IMG/VR virus record: IMGVR_UViG_3300023184_000025
Span: 62,001 to 126,000 of that record
Length of the DNA: 64,000 nt
Strand: one strand, 5' to 3'
Below, piece after piece: positions 11,349 to 26,871 of the stretch. Under the pieces are notes generated by a model that saw only the letters and a list, made by a program, of their open reading frames with translations, made no database searches and was not told the origin of the DNA. The number at the start of each line of letters is the position of its first letter. Within the stretch, counting starts at the first letter, position 1. A program made the translations under genes and the position numbers.

Positions 11349-11460
11349 TTTTTACGTGTTATTTTGGTATGTTTGGATAAATTGATAGTGTTATATGGAA
11401 GTGTACTAATAAAATACCATTATCTTAAAGATCATAGTAAATAACACATAGGAGAATCAA

Positions 11461-11754
11461 ATGATTACATTTATTAAAAAACTTTTTGGGCTAGAAAAAC
11501 CCTCAGTTACAGAAGCACCGTATAAGGTAGAGACACCGACATCAGTTGTAACACCACTGACGGTGGGGTCTGAAGGAGTTGCACCAGCGGTTAAACCCAA
11601 AGCTGTTGTGGTTGAAAACACCGAAATTATACCCGTGAGCTTTTCTGACATACCAGTAATGGTTGCTACAACAAAAACACCTGCTAAAAGAGGACCCGCA
11701 AAACCAAAAGTTGCTAAAACGCCGCGAACACCTACAAAACCTGCGGCAAAATAA
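11461..11754 (+). CDS. Protein with N-terminal amphipathic helix and histone-H1-like Lys/Pro/Ala tail
   Basis: TAAATA 11438-11443, SD AGGAG. Confidence 0.7.
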   Translation: MITFIKKLFGLEKPSVTEAPYKVETPTSVVTPLTVGSEGVAPAVKPKAVVVENTEIIPVSFSDIPVMVATTKTPAKRGPAKPKVAKTPRTPTKPAAK

Positions 11755-11763
11755 ACAAGGTCA

Positions 11764-12471: not shown

Positions 12472-12530
12472 ATTAAAATTAATACTATTAGTATGACTAT
12501 GATGCCAGCAATGACTCCTGGTAGTCTCAT
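12465..12530 (-). CDS. 21-aa single-TM peptide (not in the ORF track)
   Basis: MRLPGVIAGIIVILIVLILIW; overlaps both neighbours. Confidence 0.55.
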   Translation of the reverse strand: MRLPGVIAGIIVILIVLILIW

Positions 12531-13132
12531 TTTTTATCAAACAGTAAACTTGACGCAACAATTAGTACAGTCTGTGCTAACTCTACTTCTGTTGGTTGCT
12601 CTTTCCAACCTACACTTATTTGTCCTATAAACAATCCAGGGTCTGCTGGCACGCTTATGCGACACATGTATGTTACTCCATAGTTTTTATAAGTAAATCC
12701 AATATAACTTTGTGGTGTTAGATACGGACCGCATGGAATTTTGCCTGACATTAATCCAATTACATCTTCGTTGTTGCTGTGATTCTTAGTAAGCAACCCC
12801 ACATTGGTTCCATCATGGACTGTGTCATGTCCTGAGCCTCGTGTAGTTAGATATACTAATTTTCTGGTGTTCAGTAATGTGTTAACTTGGAATACAGCCA
12901 CAAGCTCTGCATCTGTATTCTTTAGTATAAAATTGACTGCTTGTTCATATTTGCCGTTCATCTTGGGCAAGGCCTGTTGAGCACGATAACTTGCCATGAA
13001 GTTATCTTTTTCAGTATAGGCTACCCATCCTAAAAAAGTGAATAGGCAAAGGAACACAACTGTAAATAGGCGAAATGGACTTTCGCCTATAAACTTTAAC
13101 AGTTCAAGCAGTAACTCTTTAAGTTTGTCCAC
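12527..13132 (-). CDS. T4 holin T-like protein (N-terminal TM plus periplasmic GAF-like domain)
   Basis: Size, topology and pattern similarity to T4 T, aligned by eye from memory. Confidence 0.5.
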   Translation of the reverse strand: MDKLKELLLELLKFIGESPFRLFTVVFLCLFTFLGWVAYTEKDNFMASYRAQQALPKMNGKYEQAVNFILKNTDAELVAVFQVNTLLNTRKLVYLTTRGSGHDTVHDGTNVGLLTKNHSNNEDVIGLMSGKIPCGPYLTPQSYIGFTYKNYGVTYMCRISVPADPGLFIGQISVGWKEQPTEVELAQTVLIVASSLLFDKK

Positions 13133-14396
13133 CGGCAGTTACCTCTTTGTCGCATACAAATGCTGTGACTGCTACGTTGCCGTGTACATGACTTGCTGTG
13201 CGAATCATATCCATTAATGGATCAACTGCTATCAACAATACCAATACAGCTTCGCTTGGTAGTTTTAACAAATCACAAACAACTGCTACAGTAGCAACTG
13301 TTAAGATACCTGTTGTACCTGCACTTGCTAATCCGGCTAAAATACTACCAAACAATACAACTGCTAAACCGGTAAGTCCTAGAGGAGCATCATAGATGTT
13401 GGCAATGAATACTGTAGCAATAGCATAGTAAACAATGCTACCAATACGGTTAACAGTGAAACTTAGTGGAACTGTTAGTTCAACTCCACCTTTGTCAAAA
13501 TGTAGTTTATGTAAGGCTTCTTGTGCGTATGGAATACAAGCCAATGAACTACGTGAACTAATAGCAACAATTAATGTTTCTTTAGTTTCACGGATAACAG
13601 TGGCAAGGCTTAATCCACTACGTGCCCAAATCACAGCAGTACCTGCGGCAACTACTAATAGTCCGCCAATGAACTGTTGGAACACAAAGTCAAACATTGT
13701 TAAGAAAATACCAACTCCAACTTTACCAACTTGACTGCTGATCATTGCCAACAATGCAAATGGTAGGAAGTAGTTTAAGAATTTGAAAATACTAATACTT
13801 GCTTGTTGAACACTCTTCAGTACTTCAACCAACATACGTTGTCCTTCTGTTTTCAAGTGACCCAGTGCAACTCCAAATATCAAACAGAAGATAACAATCT
13901 TCAAACTTTCACCATTGTTCAGTGTGGCAAAAATGTTTTCTGGGATAAACTTCTCTGCCATTTTACCAGCACTGACTGCGGGTGCCGTTGACATTGGTTC
14001 GTGAAGGGTAATGTTTAATTCAGTTCCGGTATCTTTGTTGTTGACTAGTACACCAAATTCTGTTTTCTTCTCAGGAGTCATTTCTGTACCTGTTACTAGT
14101 ACAGTTCCTACACCAATAACAGCAGCCAAGAACATACTGCCAACAAAGCCCACAATAATTTTGCGAATTAATTCCTGACTACCTTCTTTTTGTAATAGCC
14201 CAATGATACCAACTAGAATAGTTGCTAACAAAAATGGTAGTACAACTACCTTTAGCAAACTAATATAGATACTACCAATACTGTCAAGACCCATACTAAA
14301 CTCAGGTGCGTAAACGCCGCCTAAAATACCTGCGATAATTGATCCTAAAATAGTCCAAGGACTAGTCAGGAAACTTTTTAAATGTGTTGTTGTCAT
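13119..14396 (-). CDS. Dicarboxylate/amino acid:cation symporter (DAACS, GltP family)
   Basis: IPENIF, SSRSS hairpin-1 motif, DMIRT TM8 motif. Confidence 0.9.
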   Translation of the reverse strand: MTTTHLKSFLTSPWTILGSIIAGILGGVYAPEFSMGLDSIGSIYISLLKVVVLPFLLATILVGIIGLLQKEGSQELIRKIIVGFVGSMFLAAVIGVGTVLVTGTEMTPEKKTEFGVLVNNKDTGTELNITLHEPMSTAPAVSAGKMAEKFIPENIFATLNNGESLKIVIFCLIFGVALGHLKTEGQRMLVEVLKSVQQASISIFKFLNYFLPFALLAMISSQVGKVGVGIFLTMFDFVFQQFIGGLLVVAAGTAVIWARSGLSLATVIRETKETLIVAISSRSSLACIPYAQEALHKLHFDKGGVELTVPLSFTVNRIGSIVYYAIATVFIANIYDAPLGLTGLAVVLFGSILAGLASAGTTGILTVATVAVVCDLLKLPSEAVLVLLIAVDPLMDMIRTASHVHGNVAVTAFVCDKEVTAGGQT

Positions 14397-14405
14397 GCTA
14401 AATCC

Positions 14406-15239
14406 TTATTTCTTTTCAGCTTTGTAGCGATCCATTAACTTTTTAGTGTCAATGTTGTTGTATTCATTCTTAATAACGTAATTAACAATGCTTAACAATT
14501 GAATCGATTTGGGATTTACTGCTACTGCAATATAGTCCACGCTGTCACTAATTGCAATTGTTTTGGTACTAATTGCGGCATCTGGCTTTTCGAAGGCAAT
14601 TTTCTTAATTTCAAATTCGTCACGGTAAGCGGCAGCAATAGTGCCCTTGGTAACATTATCAATAATCACATCCCATTTTTCTTCAGGAATAAATGTTGCG
14701 TTAGGAAAGTTAATACGAGCAAATGTGTCGTAGCTGGAATTCTTGATAAAACTTATCTTGCCATTGAAGTCACGGATAACTTGATATGTTTCTTTACCTT
14801 GACTGTTTTGACTTAGCCATAGACGATTAACAATTAAACTTTGTCTTAGCTTAACATAAGGATCACTGAATCTAACTACTTGTAGTCGAGGACCAGTTAC
14901 TGACAGTTTACTAACTGCAATGTCTGCTTTGCCTTCTCTGATCTGTTCAACAACTTCAGCAAAGCTTTCTGCATCGCGTCTGAACTGCACAGGAACTCCA
15001 AGTAGGACACCAATTCGTCGAGCTATCTCGACGTCAAGACCATGAATGTTATCCCCTTCTCCGGAGAAGAAAGGAGGAACATCTTTTTTGGTCATTGACA
15101 CAACAAGAACATTAGCTTTCTTGATTGCGGCAATATCTGAAGGTAGTGGTACTGTTGAGTTAGCCAGCTGTGCTTGTCCCGTTGCCGGGGTAGTCCACAG
15201 GGTAACTAGTACGGATAGTAATAATAGTAGTTTTTTCAT
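14406..15239 (-). CDS. Periplasmic amino-acid-binding protein (SBP family 3)
   Basis: Signal peptide; PPF, GLDVEIA, GKADIA, FSDPY motifs. Confidence 0.9.
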   Translation of the reverse strand: MKKLLLLLSVLVTLWTTPATGQAQLANSTVPLPSDIAAIKKANVLVVSMTKKDVPPFFSGEGDNIHGLDVEIARRIGVLLGVPVQFRRDAESFAEVVEQIREGKADIAVSKLSVTGPRLQVVRFSDPYVKLRQSLIVNRLWLSQNSQGKETYQVIRDFNGKISFIKNSSYDTFARINFPNATFIPEEKWDVIIDNVTKGTIAAAYRDEFEIKKIAFEKPDAAISTKTIAISDSVDYIAVAVNPKSIQLLSIVNYVIKNEYNNIDTKKLMDRYKAEKK

Positions 15240-15244
15240 AATTA

Positions 15245-15252
15245 TATTTATA
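15245..15252 (-). promoter_or_regulatory. T4-like late promoter TATAAATA
   Basis: Exact T4 late consensus 5 nt before the ATG. Confidence 0.65.
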
Positions 15253-15319
15253 GTCAAATGTCCAGGACATACTTGCATTATGCCGAACAGTATCTAATAG
15301 AATTGTTGATTTAAAGAAT

Positions 15320-15346
15320 AAAAAAAGAGCCTTTTTTGGGGCTCTT
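15320..15346 (-). terminator. Intrinsic terminator
   Basis: AAGAGCC/GGCTCTT stem plus U run. Confidence 0.75.
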
Positions 15347-15427
15347 GGTACTGGTTACGCAAATCCAGCGACACGCTATCTTGTGCCCGGTTTTAAAGGG
15401 TTAAAAACTAACATTAAATGCTAGTCA

Positions 15428-16084
15428 TTACTTTCCTAATAATGTATCAACTTTAGCTTCAGCGGCGTCTAAACGTGCTTCAATAGCATCTAGTGCTGAA
15501 TTTGAAGGAATAGCAACTGCTTCAACAACTTGTTGAACTACTTCAGGAGCAACAGCTTCAACACCTGTTGCGGCAGCAATAACTTCGGCAACTGCTTCAG
15601 CAACTTGTTGTGCTACTTCGGCGGCCGGAGCTGGCATGTCAGCCACTGCTTGCATGATAGCTTCTGTGATTGCAATCGGGTCAACTACAACCTCTGGGTC
15701 GGCGGCGACGACTGCTTGAACTGCGGCTGAAATGATGTCAGCAACTTCTTCATGAGCAACTGCTTCTGATTCAACTTGTGCTGTAATAACGTCAGCAACA
15801 ATGTCAGCGGCTTCTGCGTGGTCAGCACTTGGAGAAAGTGCAACTACTTCTGCAACTGCGCTTTGAATGCTTTCAACTGCTTGTGCCGCTGCCGCAACAA
15901 TAGCGTCAACGTGTTCTTGAGTTTTTACAGCAATTAATTGCTCTACTTGAACTTCAACAACGGATAATCTTGCGTCTAGTTCTTCAATACTAGTAGCACC
16001 GTCTGTATTAACTGTTGTACCGGTTAAATTTGCTAATTTGGCTTCTACGGCTACTAATCTTGTAGCTAAATCATCTAATCTCAT
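15428..16084 (-). CDS. Acidic Ala/Val/Glu-rich helical protein with coiled-coil ends
   Basis: No F/W/Y/C; strong SD AAGGAG. Confidence 0.75.
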   Translation of the reverse strand: MRLDDLATRLVAVEAKLANLTGTTVNTDGATSIEELDARLSVVEVQVEQLIAVKTQEHVDAIVAAAAQAVESIQSAVAEVVALSPSADHAEAADIVADVITAQVESEAVAHEEVADIISAAVQAVVAADPEVVVDPIAITEAIMQAVADMPAPAAEVAQQVAEAVAEVIAAATGVEAVAPEVVQQVVEAVAIPSNSALDAIEARLDAAEAKVDTLLGK

Positions 16085-16148
16085 GGGTTTCTCCTTGTGG
16101 GGTTAGTTTGTGTGCCACCATGACACATAATTATTTAACAGATATTAT

Positions 16149-16166
16149 GTGACAGTGATGTTACAA
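16149..16166 (-). promoter_or_regulatory. Pho box TTGTAAC-ATCA-CTGTCAC
   Basis: Two 7-mers at 11-bp period matching CTGTCAY. Confidence 0.6.
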
Positions 16167-16167
16167 A

Positions 16168-16890
16168 TCACGACCAATATTTAGATGAGTCCAAACTATC
16201 CCAATATTTTTTATTGTTGCGATTTGCAAAGTTCTTGACAAGATACTTGGCCATGCCCATGTATCCCATTTTCTTAAACCTGCGCGAATCTTGGCCAAAG
16301 TGGTGTCGAACAATTCGAAACTTTCTAGGGCTGTATTTCCTAGATAAAAAGTAATCTTCCGACGTTGAAAACTGTTCAGGAAATCCTCCAAACTCCTCAA
16401 AACGATCTCTGCGGGTCAGCATGAATGCTCCCACAGCAAATGGACTAATGTATTTCAACACATGATTGATTAGGTTAAATGCTGTGAACCCAATCTTGGC
16501 ACGTAGGTCCTTGTCATAGCATTTAATATTGAGTCCAATAAGATCTAAATTTTTACGCTCAATTAAATTAACTGCATCACGTATAACCGTAGGTTTAAAG
16601 AAGCGAACATCAGCATCAATAAACAAGATGTAAGGTGTAGTTACCAGTCGTGCTCCACAATTTTTAGCAAAGGAAACAGGCCCACCATCTATGATTTCTA
16701 CATTCAAATTGCCCTTTGTTGCTTGGATAACTTCACGGGTATTGTCAGTTGAGCAGTCTGCAATAATAATTCTAGTGCTACCTATCATTTGATTGCGCAG
16801 ATGTGTTAGAAGATAGGAAATATAGTTTTCCTCATTCTTACAAGGAATCACAATAGTAATTTTATCACTGAATTTTATTGTTTCTTGCAT
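16168..16890 (-). CDS. Glycosyltransferase family 2
   Basis: IVIPCKNEE, DCSTD, FIDAD, SED motifs. Confidence 0.9.
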   Translation of the reverse strand: MQETIKFSDKITIVIPCKNEENYISYLLTHLRNQMIGSTRIIIADCSTDNTREVIQATKGNLNVEIIDGGPVSFAKNCGARLVTTPYILFIDADVRFFKPTVIRDAVNLIERKNLDLIGLNIKCYDKDLRAKIGFTAFNLINHVLKYISPFAVGAFMLTRRDRFEEFGGFPEQFSTSEDYFLSRKYSPRKFRIVRHHFGQDSRRFKKMGYMGMAKYLVKNFANRNNKKYWDSLDSSKYWS

Positions 16891-17045
16891 TCTGCTACCA
16901 CCTTAAAATTGTCAAACTTCAGTTTGTACTTAATTGTATTTAATGTCTGCAGGCAAGAGTGTTGATCCAGGAAAGTCAATTCTATCCGTCCCGGAACGTC
17001 CTGAGGATTGTTTACGTGAACTGCCAGTATTATCAGTATCCACAC
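16875..17045 (-). CDS. Small protein (56 aa, not in the ORF track)
   Basis: GTG start with SD AAGGAG; MWILIILAVHVNNPQDVPGRIEL...ECKKQ. Confidence 0.55.
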   Translation of the reverse strand: MWILIILAVHVNNPQDVPGRIELTFLDQHSCLQTLNTIKYKLKFDNFKVVAECKKQ

Positions 17046-17793
17046 GGTCTTTCTCCTTGGTCCATGTAACTATTTCCCATGTACCATCGTGGTGTTCTAC
17101 CAGTGCTGTACAACTTTCAACCCAGTCGCCATCATTCATATACGCAACACCATCTATGGTTTTTATTTCAGCGTGATGTATGTGTCCACAGATCACACCG
17201 TCAAACCCACGCTTCTTGCAGTAAGCGGCAAGATTCTGTTCAAATTTGAATATAAAGTCTACGGCTTTTTTTACTTTGTGTTTAAGATACTTACTAAGAC
17301 TAAAGTACCCAAAACCCATGCGATGACGGATCCAATTGAATTTGCTATTAAGCGATAAAATAATGTCATATGCTTTGTCTCCTAAAAATGCTAGCCATGG
17401 TGCCAGTCTGGTAATGCCATCAAACAGGTCACCGTGTGTGACTAGATAGTGCTTGCCGTTGGCACCTATATGTTCGATTTGATTGTGTATTTCTACATGA
17501 CCAAAACTAAAACCATACGGTATCATGGGTCTTAGAAACTCATCGTGGTTGCCTGCTATATAAACAACACGGGTGCCACGCTTGGCATGACCCAGAACTC
17601 TTCGTACTACATTGGTGTGGCTTTGCTTCCAACGCCATTTGTTTTGTTGTATGCGCCAGGCATCAATGATATCCCCTACCAAATATAATGTGTCGCAGGA
17701 ATTGTGTTTGAGAAAGTTGTTTAACTTATCCGCTTGACAGTCTTTGGTACCAAGATGAACATCGCTGACAAAGATACTGCGGTATGTCTTCAT
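16930..17793 (-). CDS. PlcP/LpxH-like metallophosphoesterase
   Basis: SDVHLG, GDIID, GNHD, HGD, CGHIH, GDWVES motifs. Confidence 0.85.
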   Translation of the reverse strand: MKTYRSIFVSDVHLGTKDCQADKLNNFLKHNSCDTLYLVGDIIDAWRIQQNKWRWKQSHTNVVRRVLGHAKRGTRVVYIAGNHDEFLRPMIPYGFSFGHVEIHNQIEHIGANGKHYLVTHGDLFDGITRLAPWLAFLGDKAYDIILSLNSKFNWIRHRMGFGYFSLSKYLKHKVKKAVDFIFKFEQNLAAYCKKRGFDGVICGHIHHAEIKTIDGVAYMNDGDWVESCTALVEHHDGTWEIVTWTKEKDRVDTDNTGSSRKQSSGRSGTDRIDFPGSTLLPADIKYN

Positions 17794-17824
17794 CTATTAT
17801 TTAAGATAAAGACTAACAAAGATC

Positions 17825-17842
17825 ATTACAATTTTATTACAA
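17825..17842 (-). promoter_or_regulatory. Pho box-like TTGTAAT-AAAA-TTGTAAT
   Basis: 11-bp period direct repeat upstream of the plcP-like gene. Confidence 0.55.
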
Positions 17843-17844
17843 AA

Positions 17845-18594
17845 TCATACTCTTGTTGATATTTTAGCCAACTTTAAAAAGCCAAATAATTTAAGATACA
17901 TCCATCCAACGTCAAATTCAAACCAGCGTCGACTCAGACGAGGATTGCCTGGATCAAGGTGATGGTTATTGTGTAGTTCTTCACCACCAATGACAATTCC
18001 CCAAGGACTGAAGTTACGACTATGATCTTTGGTTACGCCATTTCTGTACCCTATCCAATGCCCAACACCGTTGACAACACCTGCGGCCCAGAATGGAATC
18101 CATAACATCTGAACTCCCCACACTACAAATCCCCACCAGCTGAAACAAAGTAAATTTATGCCCAATAGCAAAGTAATTCCTAAACGACTGTGTGCGGAAT
18201 ATATGTTGTGTTCTATCCAATCATCCGGGGTTCCAACACCATAGGCATTGACCATGTTTGTATCTTTGCTTGCTGAATGATATAATCCTGCTCCTTTGAA
18301 TAACACATGCCAGAATCCATAAACATGCGGAGAGTGAGGATCGCCTTCTGCATCACTATGTCTGTGATGTTTGCGATGTATTGCTACCCACTGTTTGGTA
18401 ACCATGCCTGTTGTCAACCATAACCAGGCTCGCATAAAATGTTCAAGTATCGGATTGAATTCTATTCCCCGATGCGCTTGGCCACGATGTAAAAATAAAG
18501 TAACACATACTATGGTAATATGTGTCGCTGTCAATGTGTATATTAGTGCTATCATGTAGTATATAGCTGACAAAAATAGTGCTACATATAGCAC
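17845..18594 (-). CDS. desA: Membrane fatty-acid (delta-9-type) desaturase
   Basis: His boxes HRGQAH, HRKHH, HNNHH. Confidence 0.9.
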   Translation of the reverse strand: MLYVALFLSAIYYMIALIYTLTATHITIVCVTLFLHRGQAHRGIEFNPILEHFMRAWLWLTTGMVTKQWVAIHRKHHRHSDAEGDPHSPHVYGFWHVLFKGAGLYHSASKDTNMVNAYGVGTPDDWIEHNIYSAHSRLGITLLLGINLLCFSWWGFVVWGVQMLWIPFWAAGVVNGVGHWIGYRNGVTKDHSRNFSPWGIVIGGEELHNNHHLDPGNPRLSRRWFEFDVGWMYLKLFGFLKLAKISTRV

Positions 18595-18609: not shown

Positions 18610-18897
18610 CTAAGCAAGCATCCTAATCAGGCCAATACTGTCAATGGTGGTTAGCAATAGGTAGTTAGCCAACATGCCAAATGATTTCCTAGTATAAGCA
18701 GCCCAAGCATAGAGAGCGCAGCCAGCAATCCAAATAGGGTACAGAATAAGTAGAGGCGGAGTTGGGACTGTTGTTGCCATAGTAATGGAACAGCCAATGC
18801 TAATAGCCCAAGCGAGCAACTCAATAACAAAACGAATTCTATTAGACTTAAAGTCATCTTGTATCCAATCAAATGTAGGTTTTAAAAGTTCATTCAT
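18610..18897 (-). CDS. Small three-TM membrane protein
   Basis: Hydrophobic; ATGA overlap. Confidence 0.7.
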   Translation of the reverse strand: MNELLKPTFDWIQDDFKSNRIRFVIELLAWAISIGCSITMATTVPTPPLLILYPIWIAGCALYAWAAYTRKSFGMLANYLLLTTIDSIGLIRMLA

Positions 18898-19952
18898 GAT
18901 TTGTTGGGGAAAAAATCCTGCATCACACCTTCTCTGTGCAGGTCAAGTGTTACACAATGTATGCCACCGTCCCAAAAATATCTATGTCTAAACGGCACAA
19001 TGTGAGGAGTAATACCATATCTATCCAAGGCATCAAACACTTGTTTGTTGTAGTTAAACACCATGACATTCTTGGGATCAATAATCAACATGTTGACATC
19101 AAACACAGTTTCTTCTACGTATCCTGTCCAATGTCCCAGCCAGGTTTCAATAGTTTCAATTACATCATTGTCGTATTCAAAACCTGGGATCCACCACTTG
19201 CCGCGATTTTTTTGTTTTAAATCTAAAAATGGTTTAACCTTGCTCCAACTTTGGTCTTGAAGATACACCACTTCCCATCCAGGAAAAGTTTTTTCATAAG
19301 TGGGGATGTCACACAAACTAATAATCAATCCAGGACAAACAGGGCAGAATACGCCATCGGCATGACCACCAGTTTTAACTATATGATTTCTTGTATGTAA
19401 AAAATTTTCATTAATTTCTTTTTCAAGATTTCTTACTTGATCTATATTGGGCATTGTTCCAAAATATAAATCTTTTCCTATCCTAGATATCATTGCACCA
19501 TTGATAGTTGGGTGATTACTTATTTTAATTTGATTGCCCTGAGATTGTACATGTTTTACAATATCTCCATAACAGTCTTGCATGGTGGCAGTTAGCTGAC
19601 TGCTATTCCACGTGCTGATATTTGTGTTAGAACCGAGAAACATTTCTGAATCTGGCTTAGATGTATAAAAATCTTCTCCAGCCATGATCATAATATCCCT
19701 CGGACACATTGGTGGTGGAATATATCTTTCGCCTAATATTTTTTCTGTAGGAAAATTAGGCCTTAGTATCTCTACTCCAAATTCTTGCAATTTTTCGATT
19801 ATGTGCTGGTAATCTTCTTCTGTTTCGGTGGCTATTTTTTCCATGAGTTTACGCACATGTGTTACCTTAATCCATGAATAAAATTCAGGTGGGTAGCTAC
19901 GACCTACTACACAAACTTTCAAAGGATCCCAGTGTTGGTACACACTATACAT
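18894..19952 (-). CDS. Amidinotransferase (glycine/inosamine amidinotransferase family), copy 2
   Basis: WDPLKVCVVG, CPRD, GHADG, GGIHCVT motifs. Confidence 0.85.
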   Translation of the reverse strand: MYSVYQHWDPLKVCVVGRSYPPEFYSWIKVTHVRKLMEKIATETEEDYQHIIEKLQEFGVEILRPNFPTEKILGERYIPPPMCPRDIMIMAGEDFYTSKPDSEMFLGSNTNISTWNSSQLTATMQDCYGDIVKHVQSQGNQIKISNHPTINGAMISRIGKDLYFGTMPNIDQVRNLEKEINENFLHTRNHIVKTGGHADGVFCPVCPGLIISLCDIPTYEKTFPGWEVVYLQDQSWSKVKPFLDLKQKNRGKWWIPGFEYDNDVIETIETWLGHWTGYVEETVFDVNMLIIDPKNVMVFNYNKQVFDALDRYGITPHIVPFRHRYFWDGGIHCVTLDLHREGVMQDFFPNKS

Positions 19953-19980
19953 TTACATGTCTTTCATAAACCTGTTCACT
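19927..19980. repeat. 54-bp exact direct repeat (second copy 21142-21195)
   Basis: Covers the uvsE 3' end and the amidinotransferase start. Confidence 0.9.
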
Positions 19981-20031
19981 GTTAAAGTTATCTTGAATAC
20001 ATTCAGGTGTGGGCTTTAGTAGTTCATTCAT
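19945..20031 (-). CDS. 28-aa chimeric ORF at the duplication junction
   Basis: MNELLKPTPECIQDNFN + SEQVYERHVNV. Confidence 0.55.
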   Translation of the reverse strand: MNELLKPTPECIQDNFNSEQVYERHVNV

Positions 20032-21167
20032 TTTTTATTTGGAAAAAAGTCTTGCATCACACCTTCTCTGTGTAGATCAAGTGTTACACAGTGGATGCCG
20101 CCGTCCCAGAAATATCTGTGTCTAAAATTAATAACGTGTGGAGTAATTCCATATCTACTTAGTGCTTCAAACACGCGATCGTTGTAATTGAACACAATGA
20201 CATTTTTTGGATCAATAATCAGCATGTTGACGTCAAACACAGTTTCCTCAACATACCCGGTCCAATGTCCTAGCCAATTTTCTACAACATCAACCACATT
20301 CTGATCGTATTCAAAACCCGGTATCCACCATTTACCGTTGTTTTTGGCTTTTAAATCTTTGAATGGTTTAATGTGGTCCCAACTCTGTCCTGGGAGATAA
20401 ACAACTTCCCAGCCTGGAAAAGTTTCTGCATAAGTTGGTACATCTTTTAAACTAATAATTAGTCCAGGACAAACCGGACAGTAAACAGCATCTCCGTGAC
20501 CACCGGTATTGATAACATGTGTACGATTATTTGGAAACTCTTGGTTGACCACTTGTTTGATCTTGTTCTGATCGTCAGTGTACGATTCTGTGGCAAAGTA
20601 TAAGTCTTTACCAATTCGAGATGCCATCATTCCTTGCACACAGGGATGAGGACTGGTCTTTATTATATTACCCTGTGATCGAATACGATCAAATATTTTT
20701 TTATAAGGGGAGTGATGACGAAATACTTCTTCTTTGCTTGCATCAAGCCAATTGTGTACTTCAAGGCATTCCTGTTGTACATGACTTGGTAAATCAGTGA
20801 TGTCTACTGATTTTTCTGGCCAGCTTGGATCTTTAACTACGTTATAGAATTCTTCCCACTGATTTTTTGGTCTATAAAATGTCTCACCAATCATAACCAT
20901 AATGTCTCTGGGTTGCAGAGGAGGAGGTGTAAAAGGAGTCCTTGTCTGATTAAACCATTCTACAGGAATCTCAGGACGCAATACCTCTACACCAAAAGTT
21001 TCTAGCACCGTTGCAATTTTTTGCAGATCTTCTTCTGTTTCAATGGCAATACGCTCAAACAGTCTGCGCACATGTGGGACTTTGATCCAGTTATAGAACT
21101 CAGGTGGGTAGCTACGACCTACTACACAAACTTTTAATGGGTCCCAGTGTTGGTACACACTATACAT
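20028..21167 (-). CDS. Amidinotransferase, copy 1
   Basis: Same motifs; paralog of 18894-19952. Confidence 0.85.
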   Translation of the reverse strand: MYSVYQHWDPLKVCVVGRSYPPEFYNWIKVPHVRRLFERIAIETEEDLQKIATVLETFGVEVLRPEIPVEWFNQTRTPFTPPPLQPRDIMVMIGETFYRPKNQWEEFYNVVKDPSWPEKSVDITDLPSHVQQECLEVHNWLDASKEEVFRHHSPYKKIFDRIRSQGNIIKTSPHPCVQGMMASRIGKDLYFATESYTDDQNKIKQVVNQEFPNNRTHVINTGGHGDAVYCPVCPGLIISLKDVPTYAETFPGWEVVYLPGQSWDHIKPFKDLKAKNNGKWWIPGFEYDQNVVDVVENWLGHWTGYVEETVFDVNMLIIDPKNVIVFNYNDRVFEALSRYGITPHVINFRHRYFWDGGIHCVTLDLHREGVMQDFFPNKK

Positions 21168-22179
21168 TTACATGTCTTTCATAAACCTGTTCACTAGCCA
21201 GGTTCTTGCCTTTGGCTTCGCATTGAATATCAAATGTATCAGCAAAGGTCAATGCCCAATCGGTCACAGCGTCGTTCCAATAGAAGTCACTGTGTGCCCG
21301 GAGTTTCTGTTTCTTATAACCTCTAGCAAGAAGTTTATCAAGATCGGGTCTAGTTCCTCGGTCATGGTCAACCAAAAGGTCCTCGCGACTAACACTATAA
21401 TGAAGTGCAGGACGAGCGCCGCGCCAAGAGTCAATAACCCGCTTGACACGATCGTCCTGCGCGGTAATGTACTCTCCCGAGTTAATCCAGTGGTGGTGTA
21501 GGTCCAATACAAGAGCCACATGCTGAGCCACAGCCAAAGTAGTGTCAAGTCCATTTGTCATCTCATCATTCTCGATGGTAATTAAGTTTCTTGCTTCGGG
21601 GCTGAGCCTACTCAGAGTCTGCAAGAATTTAGCGGCACCACCTTTACCGCTCAAGTGTACGTTGATCTTGAACCCGTTGTCATGCCATGTGTTACCATAG
21701 CCCATCCACCGTGCCATATCAGCGTGGTATTCAAATTCCAGGATTGAACGTTCTACAATTTCATCTGCTTCGCTTGCTAGTACACAAAACTGGCCAGGAT
21801 GGAAACTCAAACGCACACCGTATTTACGTGCGGCTTCGCCTACGGGGGCAAAGATCTTTGCACAGTGATCTTGAATTTCTTGCCGTTGCCACCAGGCAAT
21901 CCATGATGGTTCAGTATAGCCCTGGAGCATTTCGCTACCGAGACGAACCATTCTACGTTCAGGGGGTAGTGTGGCTACACGTTCGATCATCCGCACAGCC
22001 GCCGATGTATTGTGATTCATGATATCCCATTGGCGTTGGTCTGCTTCGTCCGCATGCTCACGAAGCCACCTCATGGTAGTTGATCTGCCGTTTAGGTCAC
22101 GGTCTTTTGCGTTAACTTTCATACCGCCACATTCTGTGGGGTCATTAAGCCATTTGCAACAAAATCCAATTCGTCCCAT
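21160..22179 (-). CDS. uvsE: UV damage endonuclease
   Basis: RLSFHPGQF, NVH, IENDE, LDLHHH, AHSD, EAKGK motifs. Confidence 0.9.
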   Translation of the reverse strand: MGRIGFCCKWLNDPTECGGMKVNAKDRDLNGRSTTMRWLREHADEADQRQWDIMNHNTSAAVRMIERVATLPPERRMVRLGSEMLQGYTEPSWIAWWQRQEIQDHCAKIFAPVGEAARKYGVRLSFHPGQFCVLASEADEIVERSILEFEYHADMARWMGYGNTWHDNGFKINVHLSGKGGAAKFLQTLSRLSPEARNLITIENDEMTNGLDTTLAVAQHVALVLDLHHHWINSGEYITAQDDRVKRVIDSWRGARPALHYSVSREDLLVDHDRGTRPDLDKLLARGYKKQKLRAHSDFYWNDAVTDWALTFADTFDIQCEAKGKNLASEQVYERHVNV

Positions 22180-22187
22180 AGTGGCTC

Positions 22188-22379
22188 CTACCATTGATGA
22201 ATAACGTTAACACAAATAAAGAAACATGTGATTATATGTATGATAACCCAAAATGTCTTAAGGAAAAGCGCAATTCTAGCTTCACGCAAAGAAAGAATGG
22301 GAACATCGGGTCGATCTTCATCTGTCTGGCCCATCAAATGCCCAGTGGCTCTGGACCAGATGCGTTCAAGTGAATTCAC
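22188..22379 (-). CDS. Small membrane protein
   Basis: C-terminal TM; SD AGGA. Confidence 0.65.
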   Translation of the reverse strand: MNSLERIWSRATGHLMGQTDEDRPDVPILSLREARIALFLKTFWVIIHIITCFFICVNVIHQW

Positions 22380-22401: not shown

Positions 22402-22956
22402 TTACACTAGTAATTTTAACACATTTGGCATTACATCGCAAGTGAGATTGGATAATTTTTTAAAGGATTTGTCAACAGAATTTGGATGATCAACCAAAAC
22501 CCATTGCGTATCTGGGCTAGCCATAATAATACTATGTATTAGGGCAAAATAATTGAAGTTTTTATGCTCTTGAAATCTGTCAGAGGTTTTTTCTTTTTCA
22601 GATAAATCAAATCCAGCTAATAATACAATATCCGAAATGTTGCTAACTAGGTGTAATGCCACAACATCTTCTGGGCAGTCTACTTCCTGTGTAAATGTAC
22701 CTTCGTAGAGTTTAACACCCATTGGTCTTCCTATAGATTGGTAATAGTCTTTAGGCACATAAAAATTACAAACAGCTTGAAATGCACGTTGAATTAATTC
22801 TTGTGCTTTTGTCATGTCGTGACATATAACATTGTCAGTGGAGCATCCACGCCAGGTCTTCCATGAACCCCAGGTTGGACCTATGCTTTTAATAGAATCA
22901 AGGTTAACTGTTGGATCAATTTGATAGCTGTCGGCAAATACCCAATTTATTTTCAT
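22402..22956 (-). CDS. Hypothetical protein, possible Maf/sialyltransferase-like fold
   Basis: ALHL...IVLLAGFD motif. Confidence 0.45.
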   Translation of the reverse strand: MKINWVFADSYQIDPTVNLDSIKSIGPTWGSWKTWRGCSTDNVICHDMTKAQELIQRAFQAVCNFYVPKDYYQSIGRPMGVKLYEGTFTQEVDCPEDVVALHLVSNISDIVLLAGFDLSEKEKTSDRFQEHKNFNYFALIHSIIMASPDTQWVLVDHPNSVDKSFKKLSNLTCDVMPNVLKLLV

Positions 22957-24230
22957 TCAACAGCCTTTAAAGATTGCCAACGAAATGCGCCAATACATAC
23001 CCAGGCAAACGGAGTGTTGGGTTTTGGATCACTGTTAAACACAATGTCTCCGCGTGAGCCACTATATCCAGGAACTGTTGGTTCAAATGCAATACGATGT
23101 TTGTCAATTCTAATTTTTTTGACAGTGGTCTGACCTTCGGCATCTATATCAATGCTGGCCTGTCTATTAACACCGATCGACAATCCTTGTTTCCGACCTG
23201 TTCCAAAATATGCTTGATCTTTAGAAATTTTGCCCGACAACAACGATACTTCTTCGTCCCACACACTCAGAGCCATCTCTGGTTGATTGGTATTGATACC
23301 CACACGTTTATTGATAACCGCTAGAGTATCAAAGATTTTGGCCTGGCCCAAAACAGCAAGTTCTCTAAGAGTGCCAACTTTTTGTAAATTTGATTCAACA
23401 ATTGTTGGATTAATACTGTCATTTGCAATAAGTGGTTTTCCGTTTAGTGTAACTTCACTGAAGTCAATTCCCCCAGCCTTGGCAATATCCAATACTTGAT
23501 TAACTAAATGATTTTTCCATTCATCGTTGGATAGTTCTAGTGTGAGTGACGCAATTTTTGTAGCAAGTTCATTCCACGAATTGTTATCGGTGTTGATTTG
23601 TCCTTTTACAACAAGATTTTGTACTGTTAATGTGTCATCAACAATGGCATTTTTAGAAATAAGATTATTTTCTACTATCACAGTATCGTCAGTGACAATT
23701 AATTCTAATTTGGTTGATTGATCAATAATGCCTGAAGTTTTAAAATTGGTAATTAGTCGATCTTGCCAACGAGTAATACCGTTGTCAATTTCATTAACTA
23801 ACATTTTGTTTAGATCTATTCCGCTGATCTTTTGCAAAAGTTTTAGTGACATTTGCTTGTGAATAGTATTTTCAATTTTGTTTAACCAAGTAGAATCAAC
23901 TACTAGATTATCAATTGTAGACTCAACAAAAGTCTGCACAGAATTATCAACTGCCATTGATATTTTACTAGCATCTATGTATGAATCTAATCCAGGCACA
24001 TGCCCTTGTTCAAATAATTTAGTAACACTATTTTGTACAGTGGATACCAAATCAGGAACTGTTGATATATTGCTAAATTTTGCAGTAATCCTATCTTGTA
24101 CATGTTTTGTAATTTGTTCTTCAATGGCATTGAGCCATTTGCCGTTGCTCATGACGGCAGCAACTTGTTCAGCAACTGCTTTTGCTATTTGTTGTTCTAC
24201 TAACTCTGTTACCGATTTGGTGTCAAGCAT
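22953..24230 (-). CDS. Putative virion/tail-associated protein
   Basis: Helical N-terminus, beta-rich C-terminus ending GDIVFNSDP...WVC. Confidence 0.5.
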   Translation of the reverse strand: MLDTKSVTELVEQQIAKAVAEQVAAVMSNGKWLNAIEEQITKHVQDRITAKFSNISTVPDLVSTVQNSVTKLFEQGHVPGLDSYIDASKISMAVDNSVQTFVESTIDNLVVDSTWLNKIENTIHKQMSLKLLQKISGIDLNKMLVNEIDNGITRWQDRLITNFKTSGIIDQSTKLELIVTDDTVIVENNLISKNAIVDDTLTVQNLVVKGQINTDNNSWNELATKIASLTLELSNDEWKNHLVNQVLDIAKAGGIDFSEVTLNGKPLIANDSINPTIVESNLQKVGTLRELAVLGQAKIFDTLAVINKRVGINTNQPEMALSVWDEEVSLLSGKISKDQAYFGTGRKQGLSIGVNRQASIDIDAEGQTTVKKIRIDKHRIAFEPTVPGYSGSRGDIVFNSDPKPNTPFAWVCIGAFRWQSLKAVE

Positions 24231-25140
24231 GTTCTCTCCATAAATCTAATGTCGTACAGTGAAAACCGCCGCCTAATGTTCTACTATGTCGTAATTCCAA
24301 CGGAACTACTGTAAAACCTCGTTGCTCTAGTATGCGTATCAACTCTGTTTGCTTTTGGTCAACAATCACTGTTGTTGGGTCAACCACTAACATATTTAAG
24401 GCAATCCACTTGCTAGCATACGGGTAATTATAGAAGTCTTGCTCAATAACTTCATCTATATAAATTTTATCCCATTTTTCAAAAATTTTAGGGCAATTTG
24501 ATGAATTAACCCTGCTACCATTCAACAATACAAGGCCTTCGCGCAATGCGGTAATTGTAGAGTCAATATGCACACCACTATAAAAATTACAAATTTCAAT
24601 CTCCACATCCGGGAACTGTTGTTGTAGCCAATCATATGCGGCACGATTGCCTGATGGTGACTCTAAAAATAGCATCTTATCGTTTAGACGCAGTAGATTG
24701 GCCGCATCCAAAATCATACCTTCATTCCTGGGCATGTGTAGATAATTTGGTGACAAGTCAACAATGTTGTGATAGCATTGTAATTCCATGTTTCGACATG
24801 GATACATCATGGCAGTATCTACAATGGTGTCTTTATAAACTAGCAATCTGTCACGTGGGCAATAGTTGTACATTCCATCATGTGTTTGAAAGTTAAGTGG
24901 TTCCGGACGCACAACTTCTACACCTAGGCTGATCAGGGTTGTTGCCAACTTATCCAGATCTTCATTGGCTTCGTCAATGATCCTTTGAGGCACAGGACCA
25001 CGTGGAACAGGAGTTTTTTTCCAGGAAGTTTTGTTACTTTCCAATTTAAACACAGGATCGTTCACAGGCCAGTTTGCATCTGTGGCAGATCCAACTACAC
25101 AAGTTTTAAGTTTATCCCATTCGTTTTGGCTATAAATCAT
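24223..25140 (-). CDS. Amidinotransferase, copy 3 (StrB1-like)
   Basis: NEWDKL, CPRD, HIDST, GGGFHCTT motifs. Confidence 0.85.
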   Translation of the reverse strand: MIYSQNEWDKLKTCVVGSATDANWPVNDPVFKLESNKTSWKKTPVPRGPVPQRIIDEANEDLDKLATTLISLGVEVVRPEPLNFQTHDGMYNYCPRDRLLVYKDTIVDTAMMYPCRNMELQCYHNIVDLSPNYLHMPRNEGMILDAANLLRLNDKMLFLESPSGNRAAYDWLQQQFPDVEIEICNFYSGVHIDSTITALREGLVLLNGSRVNSSNCPKIFEKWDKIYIDEVIEQDFYNYPYASKWIALNMLVVDPTTVIVDQKQTELIRILEQRGFTVVPLELRHSRTLGGGFHCTTLDLWREHA

Positions 25141-25655
25141 AGATGTCCAGTAATTTGAAGAGTGTACCTTGGTTCAAGTCCAATGTTAGCTGCCATATGT
25201 GGAGTATCGTATGACCATTCAACCACGGTGCCGGCTTGCCAATTAACAACAGGTTCTCCTAACACTTCAAGATAATGTCCTGACTTCCAGTCTTCTACCA
25301 GAACAATAGCTCGTCTTATTTTGTGCTCTTGACCTTTTAATTTAAAAATATCAACATACCTAACATAAAGATCACTATGGGCTGGCATCACTGTTCCAGT
25401 ATGCATTCTGTAATAAGCAGTACCAATATCTTTCCATCCCCGAGATTCAAACAAATTAATAAATTTTTGATTCCACGATGGTAATTGATGTCTCATGTCA
25501 CAAAGGTCACCAGTAATTTTGCTCTGATATCCTTGATTGATCCAATGGTTAACACTTATTGGATCGTTAAACGGTTCATTGATGTAGTCAAGATGTTTGT
25601 ATTCATTATCCCAGAATACATCAATGTTGTACTTACGACTGTCGTGTGTTGCCAT
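25137..25655 (-). CDS. 2OG-Fe(II) oxygenase-like protein
   Basis: HSD...H...RYTLQITG. Confidence 0.65.
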   Translation of the reverse strand: MATHDSRKYNIDVFWDNEYKHLDYINEPFNDPISVNHWINQGYQSKITGDLCDMRHQLPSWNQKFINLFESRGWKDIGTAYYRMHTGTVMPAHSDLYVRYVDIFKLKGQEHKIRRAIVLVEDWKSGHYLEVLGEPVVNWQAGTVVEWSYDTPHMAANIGLEPRYTLQITGHL

Positions 25656-26871
25656 AGTGGATAATTTTGTAACCTGTCATATCAACCATTTTGCGCCATG
25701 GATCTACAATGATACTGCCAGCTTCAATAGGAGTATAGAATGTATCGTCTCGTACATCTCCAGTGTATCCATAGGTAATTTGTCGATTGTGTGCCATTAA
25801 TAATACCACAGGGCCTTTGACAGATGCAATTACATCGTTGTTGTCATCTGCCAATGGATCTAAATATTTAACGGTGCGGCCTGCTTCTTTAATGTAGTGC
25901 CCAATTAAAGTGCTGTAGCTACCAATACAATAAGGAACATCAGGCTTGTATGCTTTGCCATGAATGATAATTGGTAAATTTTTCTTTTCAGCAATATCAA
26001 CAAGAAATAGTGCTAGATTTTTTGCTTGAACTTCTCGAGCATGCATGATTGTATCAAACAAGTCATATCCAATGTCATACTCTTCAGCCAGCCAGCGCAA
26101 GGCAATGTTGTCACGTGGGTGGCATGCTCCTGCATCGCCCATGCCAGCTGTCATGTACTTGGGTCCCATAATACGCATGTTTGACTGTGCCAGTGCGTCA
26201 GTGACAACGTCAACGTTGATGTTACCAATCTTTAGTGCAAAGTCTTGAATCATGTTGACCAGTCCTACCTTGGCACTGATGAATGTATTATAGAAGATTT
26301 TGATGGCTTCGCATTCGTCCCAGGTGCCAGTCACATAACGTGGATTGTTTTTCATCAATGGACGATAGATATCTATTAGATCTCGCATTTCGCTGGCATC
26401 GCCTGTTTCTGTACCAATCATGACCATTTCAGGATTGGCCATGTCCCATTTTACGCTTCCCATGGCAATCAAATAAGGGTTGTATAAAAACTGATGTTTG
26501 TTATCTAACAACGTGGCAAAATGTCTACGTGTAGTTCCTGGAAGTACTGTAGAAATCAACACTACTCGTTTTGGTGTGGTGGCAAATTTGTTTACTTTAA
26601 CCAGGGCATCCTTAACTGCGTCGTGTCCAAAATCTTTTGGCTCCATATGACTAGATGGTACACTTCCGTCATACCCTTCGGTATGCGGTGTTGGTACAGC
26701 AATGAAAATCCAGTCACTCTTGTTGACTACCTCTTCGATGTCACAAACTTTAACCGACTCGCTTTCTCGTGGGTAAATATCATAACCACGTACAGTATAT
26801 TTTTCAGCGAAGACTTCTGCGCAATCCAAACCTAGCTTACCTAGGCCAATAAACCCAATATTATTTGACAT
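25633..26871 (-). CDS. UDP-glucose/GDP-mannose dehydrogenase family protein
   Basis: GLGKLG, AVPTP, STVLPGT, GACHPRD, AYKP motifs. Confidence 0.9.
   Translation of the reverse strand: MSNNIGFIGLGKLGLDCAEVFAEKYTVRGYDIYPRESESVKVCDIEEVVNKSDWIFIAVPTPHTEGYDGSVPSSHMEPKDFGHDAVKDALVKVNKFATTPKRVVLISTVLPGTTRRHFATLLDNKHQFLYNPYLIAMGSVKWDMANPEMVMIGTETGDASEMRDLIDIYRPLMKNNPRYVTGTWDECEAIKIFYNTFISAKVGLVNMIQDFALKIGNINVDVVTDALAQSNMRIMGPKYMTAGMGDAGACHPRDNIALRWLAEEYDIGYDLFDTIMHAREVQAKNLALFLVDIAEKKNLPIIIHGKAYKPDVPYCIGSYSTLIGHYIKEAGRTVKYLDPLADDNNDVIASVKGPVVLLMAHNRQITYGYTGDVRDDTFYTPIEAGSIIVDPWRKMVDMTGYKIIHYGNTRQS

What the first reader, a model, noticed from the sequence alone, without database searches (positions are those of the whole stretch)
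19927..21195. Tandem-duplication scar kept as an in-frame chimeric coupling ORF
The spacer between the two amidinotransferases encodes MNELLKPTPECIQDNFN, a diverged copy of the start of 18610-18897 (MNELLKPTFDWIQDDFK). This is fused in frame to SEQVYERHVNV, the exact end of UvsE (54-bp exact repeat). It defines both duplication breakpoints and preserves translational coupling at both ends, while the paralogues have diverged centrally.
Basis: seen in the sequence. Interest (0 to 1): 0.6.

Follow-up and report, generated by a model that had tools for sequence, protein, structure and literature searches.

The report
Recombination scar between two phage amidinotransferases
Two amidinotransferase genes sit head to tail in a lake jumbo phage, joined by a real 28-codon leftover ORF, but the second gene is most likely a swapped-in foreign allele, and nothing shows that the leftover ORF is kept by selection.

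Summary
On the minus strand the order is UvdE, AT-A, a 28-codon ORF, AT-B, then a 95-aa membrane ORF. Two units, 21195..19981 and 19980..18847, abut without a gap.

The junction ORF joins the first 17 codons of the membrane gene to the last 11 codons of UvdE. Both stop/start overlaps (ATGA and ATGTATAG) are reproduced. A 54-nt exact repeat marks the 5' end of each unit.

It is not an assembly artefact. A second IMG/VR contig is identical over 8.9 kb, and contigs from several studies carry the junction.

- AT-A and AT-B are 61% identical, with saturated synonymous sites. They are no closer to each other than to about 30 homologues in other phages.
- Conserved ends with a variable centre is the profile of the whole family.
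- The membrane-gene remnant has decayed only about 22%.
- The nearest relative (L009) has AT-A alone, and most relatives have no AT gene in this slot.

AT-B is therefore most likely a foreign allele stacked or swapped in by recombination. An open, in-frame junction is expected by chance, and no second lineage carries it, so selection for coupling is untested. This is an ordinary kind of scar in an interesting hypervariable slot.

The parts
21160..22194 (-). UV-damage endonuclease gene (UvdE/UvsE family). The likely true start is the second ATG at 22179, which has AGGAG 7 nt upstream.
   Evidence: Pfam PF03851, E 4e-31. phrog_8420, E 3e-71. 44-46% identical to UvdE of cultured jumbo phages.
22231..22259 (-). 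Best sigma-70-like promoter match upstream of UvdE. It is a consensus match only.
   Evidence: AAGACA-17-TATAAT, 10 of 12. No promoter-like or terminator-like site lies in the spacer 19945-20031.
19981..21195 (-). Tandem unit 1 (1215 nt): last 33 nt of UvdE plus its stop, AT-A, and the first 51 nt of a membrane-ORF copy.
   Evidence: Alignment of the two units; the repeat finder families D1 and D2.
20028..21167 (-). AT-A, 379 aa, amidinotransferase homologue.
   Evidence: PDB hits to L-arginine:glycine amidinotransferase (E 1e-17), SxtG, HsvA and StrB1. 96% identical to the single slot gene of L009.
19945..20031 (-). 28-codon chimeric junction ORF. Its ATG overlaps the AT-A stop (ATGA), and its TAG lies 5 nt inside AT-B (ATGTATAG).
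19981..20031 (-). Remnant of the membrane-ORF head (17 codons), decaying. It has F9P, D10E, W11C, D15N and K17N.
   Evidence: 40/51 nt to its own head and to the L009 head, while those two heads are 48/51 to each other. W11 and D15 are near-invariant in the roughly 45 relatives' heads. Four to five synonymous against six non-synonymous changes.
19927..19980 (-). Copy 2 of the 54-nt exact repeat: a 33-nt UvdE tail plus the first 21 nt of the AT gene. This is the presumed translation initiation region of AT-B.
   Evidence: Identical to 21142-21195. 0/54 differences against 11/51 in the adjoining remnant.
21142..21195 (-). Copy 1 of the 54-nt exact repeat.
18847..19980 (-). Tandem unit 2 (1134 nt): UvdE-tail copy, AT-B, and the first 51 nt of the functional membrane ORF.
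18894..19952 (-). AT-B, 352 aa, amidinotransferase homologue. From about codon 25 to the stop it is as far from AT-A as any family member.
   Evidence: No orthologue above 66% identity outside this phage genotype.
18610..18897 (-). 95-aa hydrophobic ORF of unknown function that follows UvdE in nearly all relatives.
   Evidence: tblastn on 80 related loci. No Pfam or PHROG hit.

Best explanation
**What it is.** The spacer is the novel joint left by an unequal, illegitimate recombination in an uncultured freshwater jumbo phage (345 kb). The joint connects codon 17/18 of the membrane ORF to codon 334 of UvdE, so two amidinotransferase genes now lie head to tail in one operon.

**Origin of the two genes.** They are not a young duplicate pair that drifted apart in the middle. 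AT-A is the resident allele, shared with relative L009. AT-B, from about codon 25 to its stop, is a different and long-diverged allele of the same family. Two routes fit:
- The same unequal crossover with a co-infecting relative carrying another allele in this slot brought it in, and about 100 nt at the 5' end were later homogenised.
- Homologous replacement overwrote the inside of the second copy of a simple AT-A/AT-A duplication.

**The slot.** The position between UvdE and the membrane ORF is a hot spot. Most relatives have nothing there, and others carry single alleles that are 96%, 61%, 42% or 36% identical to AT-A.

**The junction ORF (inferred).** It is a by-product.
- Its membrane-derived half decays at roughly the neutral rate.
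- Its UvdE-derived half is preserved to the base, because it is the native region upstream of the AT start codon.
- None of the four starts AT-A, mini-ORF, AT-B and membrane ORF has a Shine-Dalgarno motif, and all overlap the preceding stop.
- Ribosomes therefore probably pass along the chain by termination and reinitiation, with the mini-ORF translated passively as a relay.
For: **Shown**
- Exact head-to-tail units and the chimeric joint.
- Two assemblies and contigs from several studies agree.
- About 70 of 80 UvdE relatives have UvdE running straight into the membrane ORF, often overlapping it. L009, L010, L013, L015 and L072/L074 have one AT gene of very different identity.
- AT-A and AT-B are 60.8% identical. 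About 30 homologues in other phages and gene contexts are 59-66% identical to each.
- Nucleotide identity of AT-A to AT-B exceeds the family background only at codons 1-20 and marginally at codons 351-370.
- Synonymous differences are saturated in the centre (pS 0.82-0.85), dS is about 1.4 in the C-terminal third, and dS is 0.49 with dN 0 in codons 1-25.
- The remnant is 78% identical to the membrane-ORF heads. Its changes fall at positions that are near-invariant in the relatives' heads, and its synonymous to non-synonymous ratio is compatible with neutrality.
- Window against L009 gives dS 0.36-0.64 for UvdE, AT-A and the membrane ORF alike. Both flanks of AT-B are therefore L009-like.
- 36% of the genome's genes have an SD-like motif against 5.6% background, and the four starts here have none.
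- The stop/start overlaps are conserved in slot alleles as distant as 42% (L015). L072 at 36% keeps only the downstream one.
- No promoter-like or terminator-like site lies in the spacer.

**Inferred**
- The order of events.
- Gene conversion or selection acting on the 54 nt.
- Translation by reinitiation.
Against: - The protein tree is star-like. An AU test does not reject AT-A plus AT-B as one clade (p 0.65), and the constrained tree even scored better than the quick free tree. Phylogeny therefore does not exclude an old in-situ duplication.
- No donor carrying an AT-B-like allele was found in IMG/VR or JGI metagenomes.
- The remnant is only 51 nt, so its age has wide error. It could have been reset by conversion.
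- The 54-nt identity needs an extra assumption in every model.
- There are no expression data. No listed run that holds the stretch is on record as RNA.
Confidence: 0.6

Rival explanations
1. Old in-situ tandem duplication of one AT gene. Long divergence followed, fastest in the substrate-binding centre, with occasional gene conversion at the unit ends. One copy was then lost in L009 and other relatives.
For: - The architecture is that of a tandem duplication.
- The AU test does not reject AT-A plus AT-B as a clade.
- The 5' 96 nt with 3 differences, and the slightly raised identity of the last 20 codons, could be conversion tracts.
- Deletion between direct repeats is easy.
Against: - Synonymous saturation of the genes contrasts with only about 22% decay of the neutral remnant.
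- Backbones with UvdE 94-95% identical carry AT-A alone, a third allele at 61%, or nothing. Vertical descent would need several ancient paralogues and many differential losses.
- AT-B codons 311-360 are closer to alleles from other phages (85-95%) than to AT-A (72-85%).
- No second lineage has the array.
Confidence: 0.2
2. One reading: the chimeric mini-ORF is maintained by selection, in frame and open, because its translation is needed to hand ribosomes from AT-A to AT-B. This can be true on top of either origin.
For: - Both overlaps are intact, and the mini-ORF, AT-B and membrane-ORF starts have no SD motif.
- The same overlap geometry is conserved across very divergent slot alleles.
- The 33 nt before the AT-B start are unchanged while the neighbouring 51 nt have 11 changes.
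Against: - Frame: two of three junction frames would stop at or next to the AT-B ATG (TAG overlapping it, or TAA abutting it). This is read directly from the sequence.
- Openness: 60% of simulated sequences with 11 random substitutions stay open.
- The peptide itself changes at conserved positions.
- Only one genotype carries it, so conservation cannot be measured.
- The 54-nt identity is equally explained by gene conversion.
- No significant RNA structure was found.
Confidence: 0.2
3. Assembly chimera: the two AT genes belong to different strains and were joined through the 54-nt repeat.
For: - The repeat exceeds the k-mer length, so Logan contigs break at it.
- One low-depth contig (X7, record 32) takes a different path through the repeat.
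Against: - The joint of membrane head to UvdE tail shares no sequence that could mislead an assembler.
- It lies inside contigs from three studies with no mismatch: X1 19951-20044, X2 19951-20066 and X3 19951-21129. Each has 30 nt on the UvdE-tail side, one short of the 31 letters the tool requires to count a record as bridging.
- Two separate metagenome assemblies are identical over 8.9 kb.
- With AT-A joined to the remnant and AT-B joined to the membrane ORF, only the reported order gives a linear path.
Confidence: 0.01

Closest known systems
Novel-joint (chimeric) ORFs at tandem-duplication or unequal-crossover junctions in bacterial and phage genomes
   Same: Head-to-tail units without a gap, with a joint that fuses the start of the downstream gene to the end of the upstream gene. 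The joint fixes both breakpoints. Established knowledge.
   Different: The two copies are not near-identical. The inside of the second is a long-diverged allele, so the array looks like allele stacking or replacement between related phages rather than plain amplification.
Translationally coupled overlapping genes in bacteria and phages (ATGA-type stop/start overlaps, termination-reinitiation)
   Same: The 4-nt and 8-nt overlaps at every gene boundary from UvdE to the membrane ORF, starts without SD motifs, and 42 ATGA overlaps genome-wide.
   Different: Coupling was not measured here. A 28-codon leftover ORF acting as a relay is an inference.
Amidinotransferases of the guanidino-group-modifying superfamily (AGAT, StrB1, SxtG, HsvA). 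Phage examples are annotated in cyanomyovirus S-SCSM2R (PMC12801897).
   Same: Sequence homology over the whole length for AT-A. The catalytic Cys motif GG(I/F)HC and the His-x-Asp motif align.
   Different: 25-35% identity or less to any cultured-phage or solved protein. The substrate is unknown. There are six family members in one phage genome.
Hypervariable accessory-gene slots (mosaic modules, 'morons') between conserved phage genes
   Same: The same position holds nothing or very different alleles in backbones whose flanking genes are 75-95% identical.
   Different: The inserted genes all belong to one enzyme family and are always fitted into the flanking genes' stop/start overlaps. No mobility gene lies beside them.

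Membership tests
Tandem-duplication / unequal-crossover junction | Two homologous units directly head to tail | tested here: met
   21195..19981 and 19980..18847 abut, and homology stops at the same points in both.
Tandem-duplication / unequal-crossover junction | The novel joint consists of the distal end of the unit followed by its proximal end, and is found nowhere in single-copy relatives | tested here: met
   Membrane-ORF head joined to the UvdE tail. A degenerate pattern for the joint hits only the same phage genotype in IMG/VR. L009 lacks it.
Tandem-duplication / unequal-crossover junction | The copies derive from one gene in the same genome (true duplication) | tested here: inconclusive
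   dS is saturated and the two are equidistant from about 30 other alleles, which argues against. The AU test does not reject a shared clade.
Tandem-duplication / unequal-crossover junction | Present in the DNA, not made by the assembler | tested here: met
   Second assembly identical. Junction k-mers lie in contigs from three studies. No long reads were available.
Translationally coupled operon | Stop of the upstream ORF overlaps or abuts the start of the downstream ORF | tested here: met
   ATGTATAG and ATGA at all four boundaries. Conserved in slot alleles of relatives.
Translationally coupled operon | The downstream start lacks its own ribosome-binding site | tested here: met
   No GGAG, GAGG or AGGA within -18..-4 of the AT-A, mini-ORF, AT-B or membrane-ORF starts. 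36% of genome starts have one.
Translationally coupled operon | Downstream translation depends on upstream translation | not testable with these tools
   Needs reporter or ribosome-profiling experiments. No listed run that holds the stretch is on record as RNA.
Amidinotransferase (guanidino-group-modifying enzyme superfamily) | Sequence homology to characterised amidinotransferases | tested here: met
   AT-A against AGAT, E 1e-17 over residues 4-374. AT-B against HsvA, SxtG, AGAT and StrB1, E 1e-7. The Pfam ADI hit is below the curated cut-off.
Amidinotransferase (guanidino-group-modifying enzyme superfamily) | Catalytic Cys near the C-terminus and the His-x-Asp motif | tested here: met
   GGIHC aligns with GGFHC of AGAT and GGSFHC of HsvA. 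GGHGD and GGHAD align with PHID of AGAT. All are invariant in 32 family members.
Amidinotransferase (guanidino-group-modifying enzyme superfamily) | Third residue of the catalytic triad (Asp254 of AGAT, numbering recalled from memory) | tested here: inconclusive
   The HMMER alignment places a Gln opposite it, in a poorly aligned stretch. No structure was predicted.
Amidinotransferase (guanidino-group-modifying enzyme superfamily) | Amidino-group transfer activity and substrate | not testable with these tools
   Biochemistry is needed.

The most novel reading that the evidence does not exclude
The UvdE / membrane-ORF boundary of a large clade of freshwater jumbo phages may be a dedicated landing site. 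Very different amidinotransferase alleles would be inserted, exchanged and occasionally stacked there, always fitted into the neighbours' stop/start overlaps. Each cassette would travel with the roughly 30-nt tail of UvdE that serves as its translation start region. The 28-codon leftover ORF would then be a working ribosome relay that lets a newly stacked enzyme be expressed at once. The enzyme diversity, with six family members per genome, would reflect an arms race over some amidino-modified molecule.
Probability: 0.2. Interest if true: 0.55.

Novelty: new member of a known kind. Interest (0 to 1): 0.3.

Why it matters
By itself the scar is a clean textbook example. It dates and maps a recombination event in an uncultured phage, and it shows which part of a junction is preserved (the region in front of the start codon) and which decays (the peptide-coding leftover).

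The wider context is more useful. One gene boundary accepts highly divergent amidinotransferase genes in otherwise similar jumbo phages. This gives a natural series (empty, single, stacked) for studying how phages gain and express accessory enzymes. It also flags an enzyme family of unknown substrate that these phages keep in up to six copies.

Tried and rejected
- **DNA search of cultured phages with the 4-kb region:** no match.
- **Protein tree:** unresolved star. The careful search did not finish, so the quick tree was used. The AU test could not separate the origins.
- **Sharp drop of identity to L009 at the joint:** suggested by blastn. Rejected after a sliding-window alignment and dS showed that the membrane ORF and the 5' part of the desaturase are as L009-like as AT-A. 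The divergent patch starts only near 18360.
- **X7 contig running remnant, repeat, AT-A with three AT-B-type bases:** not used as evidence. The 35-nt identical block after those bases exceeds k-1, so a graph mis-turn can produce it.
- **RNA folding of both start regions and both stop/start overlaps:** z-scores from -1.5 to +0.8, so no evidence of structure.
- **Promoter and terminator scan:** nothing in the spacer.
- **Other tandem AT pairs (L098, L136, G000 204258-206898):** about 340-440 nt separate the copies; in L098 the flanking sequences point to an intervening gene. None was examined for a scar.
- **Literature search for tandem duplication plus translational coupling in phages:** no paper.
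- **Not run:** structure prediction, complex prediction, Rfam and the large protein searches. The family assignment and the question in hand did not need them.
Full report
**Setting**

The window is bases 62001-126000 of a 345,154-bp virus record (Ga0214919_10000007). The record has 40% G+C and CheckV rates it 99% complete.

Several features mark it as a phage of bacteria:
- Genes are densely packed in long same-strand runs, with 42 four-base ATGA overlaps.
- PHROG hits include ribonucleotide reductase, DnaB-like helicase, DNA ligase and tail spike.
- Its UvdE is 44-46% identical to UvdE of cultured jumbo phages such as NCTB, Dickeya AD1 and Erwinia Y3.

Sequencing runs that hold the region come from lake and freshwater metagenomes.

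**Check of the observation**

On the minus strand the genes run in this order:

| Gene | Coordinates |
|---|---|
| UvdE | 22194..21160 |
| AT-A (379 aa) | 21167..20028 |
| 28-codon ORF | 20031..19945 |
| AT-B (352 aa) | 19952..18894 |
| Hydrophobic ORF (95 aa) | 18897..18610 |
| Fatty-acid desaturase | follows the 95-aa ORF |

- The small ORF reads MNELLKPTPECIQDNFN-SEQVYERHVNV.
- Its first 17 codons copy the head of the 95-aa ORF (40/51 nt). Its last 11 codons and stop copy the end of UvdE exactly.
- An alignment of the two units shows homology beginning at 21195/19980 and ending at 19981/18847. The units are therefore strictly head to tail.
- 19927-19980 equals 21142-21195 (54 nt), with different bases on both sides.
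- Every boundary is an overlap. ATGTATAG joins UvdE to AT-A and the mini-ORF to AT-B. ATGA joins AT-A to the mini-ORF and AT-B to the 95-aa ORF.

**Is it real DNA?**

- A second IMG/VR contig (3300023174_000044, 262 kb, from another metagenome) is 100% identical over 8,953 nt across the whole array.
- Logan contigs from four studies were laid on the region, and the pieces listed for three of them (X1-X3) carry no mismatch.
- The contigs break at the 54-nt repeat, as k-mer graphs must. Three of them run from 30 nt of the UvdE tail through the joint into the remnant and AT-A. They are X1 19951-20044, X2 19951-20066 and X3 19951-21129.
Even so, every k-mer across the joint is present in them.
- The membrane head and the UvdE tail share no sequence, so an assembler cannot invent this joint.
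- One low-depth contig in X7 takes another path through the repeat. A 35-nt identical block can explain that path, so I did not use it.

**What the genes are**

- UvdE is a clear UV-damage endonuclease.
- Both AT proteins are homologues of L-arginine:glycine amidinotransferase, SxtG, HsvA and StrB1.
- The catalytic Cys motif (GGIHC) and the His-x-Asp motif align with those enzymes and are invariant in 32 family members. The third triad residue could not be placed.
- The genome holds six members of this family.
- Phage amidinotransferases have been annotated in a cyanomyovirus (PMC12801897), but that protein is only 27% identical.

**Relatives**

I examined 80 IMG/VR loci whose UvdE is 73-95% identical.
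- In about 70 of them UvdE runs straight into the 95-aa ORF. In the closest AT-less relatives (L011, L012, L063) the two genes overlap out of frame by about 20 nt.
- A single AT gene sits in the slot in a few loci:

| Locus | UvdE identity | Identity of the slot AT gene to AT-A |
|---|---|---|
| L009 | 95% | 96% |
| L010 | 94% | 61% |
| L013 | 85% | 61% |
| L015 | 84% | 42% |
| L072/L074 | 77% | 36% |

- The insertion point differs slightly in L015 and L013.
- Only the window's own genotype has two AT genes. A degenerate pattern for the joint hits nothing else in IMG/VR.
- No AT-B orthologue above 66% identity exists in IMG/VR or in the JGI metagenome contigs.

**Are AT-A and AT-B a diverged duplicate pair?**

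- They are 60.8% identical. About 30 homologues from other phage contigs, most in quite different gene neighbourhoods, are 59-66% identical to each of them.
- The profile 'ends alike, centre different' appears in every pairwise comparison within the family. It reflects constraint, not the history of this pair.
- Nucleotide identity of AT-A to AT-B exceeds the family background only in codons 1-20 (95% against at most 85%) and marginally in codons 351-370. In codons 311-360 AT-B is closer to alleles of other phages than to AT-A.
- Synonymous differences are at the random level in the centre (pS 0.82-0.85). dS is about 1.4 in the C-terminal third, and dS is 0.49 with dN 0 in codons 1-25.

The remnant of the membrane head gives a contrasting age.
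- It should evolve neutrally, and it does carry W11C, D15N and F9P at positions that are near-invariant in the relatives' heads.
- It differs from its source at only 11 of 51 sites.
- The functional heads of the window and of L009 differ from each other at 3 of 51 sites.
- That amount of decay, about 0.2-0.25 per site, is of the order of one lineage's share of the window-to-L009 synonymous distance (dS 0.36 for UvdE, 0.64 for AT-A, 0.63 for the membrane ORF).

So the joint is roughly as old as the split from L009, while the two gene bodies are far older. Both flanks of AT-B are L009-like. I first read a blastn result as a sharp drop of identity at the joint. A sliding-window alignment and the dS values corrected this. 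The membrane ORF and the start of the desaturase are still L009-like, and a separate divergent patch begins only near 18360.

**Most likely history**

The inside of AT-B, from about codon 25 to the stop, is a foreign allele. Two routes fit the data.
1. An unequal crossover with a co-infecting relative carrying another allele in the same slot, followed by homogenisation of about 100 nt at the 5' end.
2. A plain AT-A/AT-A duplication whose second copy was then overwritten by homologous exchange. The crossovers would lie in the conserved 5' codons, where a 35-nt identical block sits, and at the membrane head.

The rival is an old in-situ duplication with loss in L009. The protein tree is a star, and the AU test (p 0.65) allows an AT-A plus AT-B clade, so phylogeny does not exclude this rival. 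It does require several ancient paralogues and many losses in backbones that are 94-95% identical, and it leaves the young remnant unexplained.

**The 54 identical bases**

There are 0 differences in 54 nt next to 11 in 51 nt, which is not chance. If the UvdE-tail copy drifted like the remnant, about 7 changes would be expected in its 33 nt. Two explanations are open.
- Gene conversion from unit 1. Homology ends exactly at the joint, which would bound the tract.
- Selection on the region from -33 to +21 around the AT-B start.

The ortholog comparison is only mildly suggestive: 1 difference in L009 and 7 in L010. I cannot decide between the two.

**Coupling**

The geometry favours termination-reinitiation along the whole chain.
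- None of the four starts has a Shine-Dalgarno-like motif, whereas 36% of this genome's starts do, against 5.6% background.
- The overlaps are conserved in slot alleles as distant as 42%; L072 at 36% keeps only the downstream one.
- The only promoter-like match lies upstream of UvdE, and the spacer has neither a promoter-like nor a terminator-like site.

The argument that the in-frame open ORF is 'kept' is weak.
- Reading the UvdE tail in its three frames gives a TAG overlapping the ATG, a TAA abutting the ATG, or an immediate TGA. Two of three junction frames would therefore serve equally well.
- 60% of simulated heads with 11 random substitutions remain open.
- There is no second lineage in which to look for conservation or breakage.
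- RNA folds around the starts are not distinguishable from shuffles.
- No listed run that holds the stretch is on record as RNA.

**Verdict**

This is a real, well-defined recombination scar of a known kind. The idea of recent duplication with central divergence is not supported. Selection on the mini-ORF is untested and is not needed to explain what is seen. The more interesting aspect is the slot itself, a hot spot for exchange of amidinotransferase alleles in freshwater jumbo phages.

Noticed in passing
L011:6960-7080, L012:6960-7080, L063:6960-7080; window 21160-21200 and 18880-18900: In AT-less relatives the 95-aa ORF starts inside the UvdE tail, with a 20-nt out-of-frame overlap (…GTTTATGAACGATATATTGCTTAA). 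In AT-bearing genomes an 8-nt motif ATGAAnGA stands at both ends of the inserted gene, which resembles a target duplication or a microhomology. The old start codon survives inside the UvdE tail.
   Followed up: partly
G000 204258-205487, 205927-206898, 264477-265514; window 24223-25140: There are four more members of the same amidinotransferase family in this genome, six in all. The pair at 204-207 kb is separated by about 440 nt, as in L098. Many relatives carry an AT gene on one or the other side of that gene, sometimes next to a DegT-like aminotransferase start.
   Followed up: partly
window 11400-18360: Compared with the genome of L009, identity is about 90% on both sides. This stretch is 62-78% identical over 18360-16130 (desaturase 3' part, metallophosphoesterase, glycosyltransferase) and has no homology over 16130-11690 (Ala-rich ORF 15428-16084, binding-protein-like ORF 14406-15278, ORF 13119-14396). 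It is a replaced mosaic module.
   Followed up: partly
window 22179-22194: The longest UvdE ORF starts at 22194. AGGAG lies 7 nt before the second ATG (22179), and relatives align from residue 5-8 on, so the real start is probably 22179.
   Followed up: no
window 21135-21141 (run X7 record 32; run X1): Low-depth contigs show AT-B-type bases at 21135, 21138 and 21141 in an AT-A context, one of them continuing into the remnant. This could be a strain with a longer identical tract (gene conversion) or a graph artefact.
   Followed up: partly
G000 177761-177975 and 180784-183299 (outside the window); window 55295-55418: The genome has other exact direct repeats: two 104-nt copies 111 nt apart, several repeats inside the 1676-aa ORF at 180204-185234, and a pair of 31-nt repeats 93 nt apart in the window.
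   Followed up: no
window 22402-26871: Upstream neighbours are a 425-aa ORF without family hits, a third AT-like gene (305 aa, phrog_25854, E 9e-30), a 172-aa ORF and a 412-aa ORF that I read as dehydrogenase-like but did not scan. Together with the glycosyltransferase-like ORF at 16168-16890 (also read by eye, not scanned) this suggests a sugar or small-molecule modification region.
   Followed up: no
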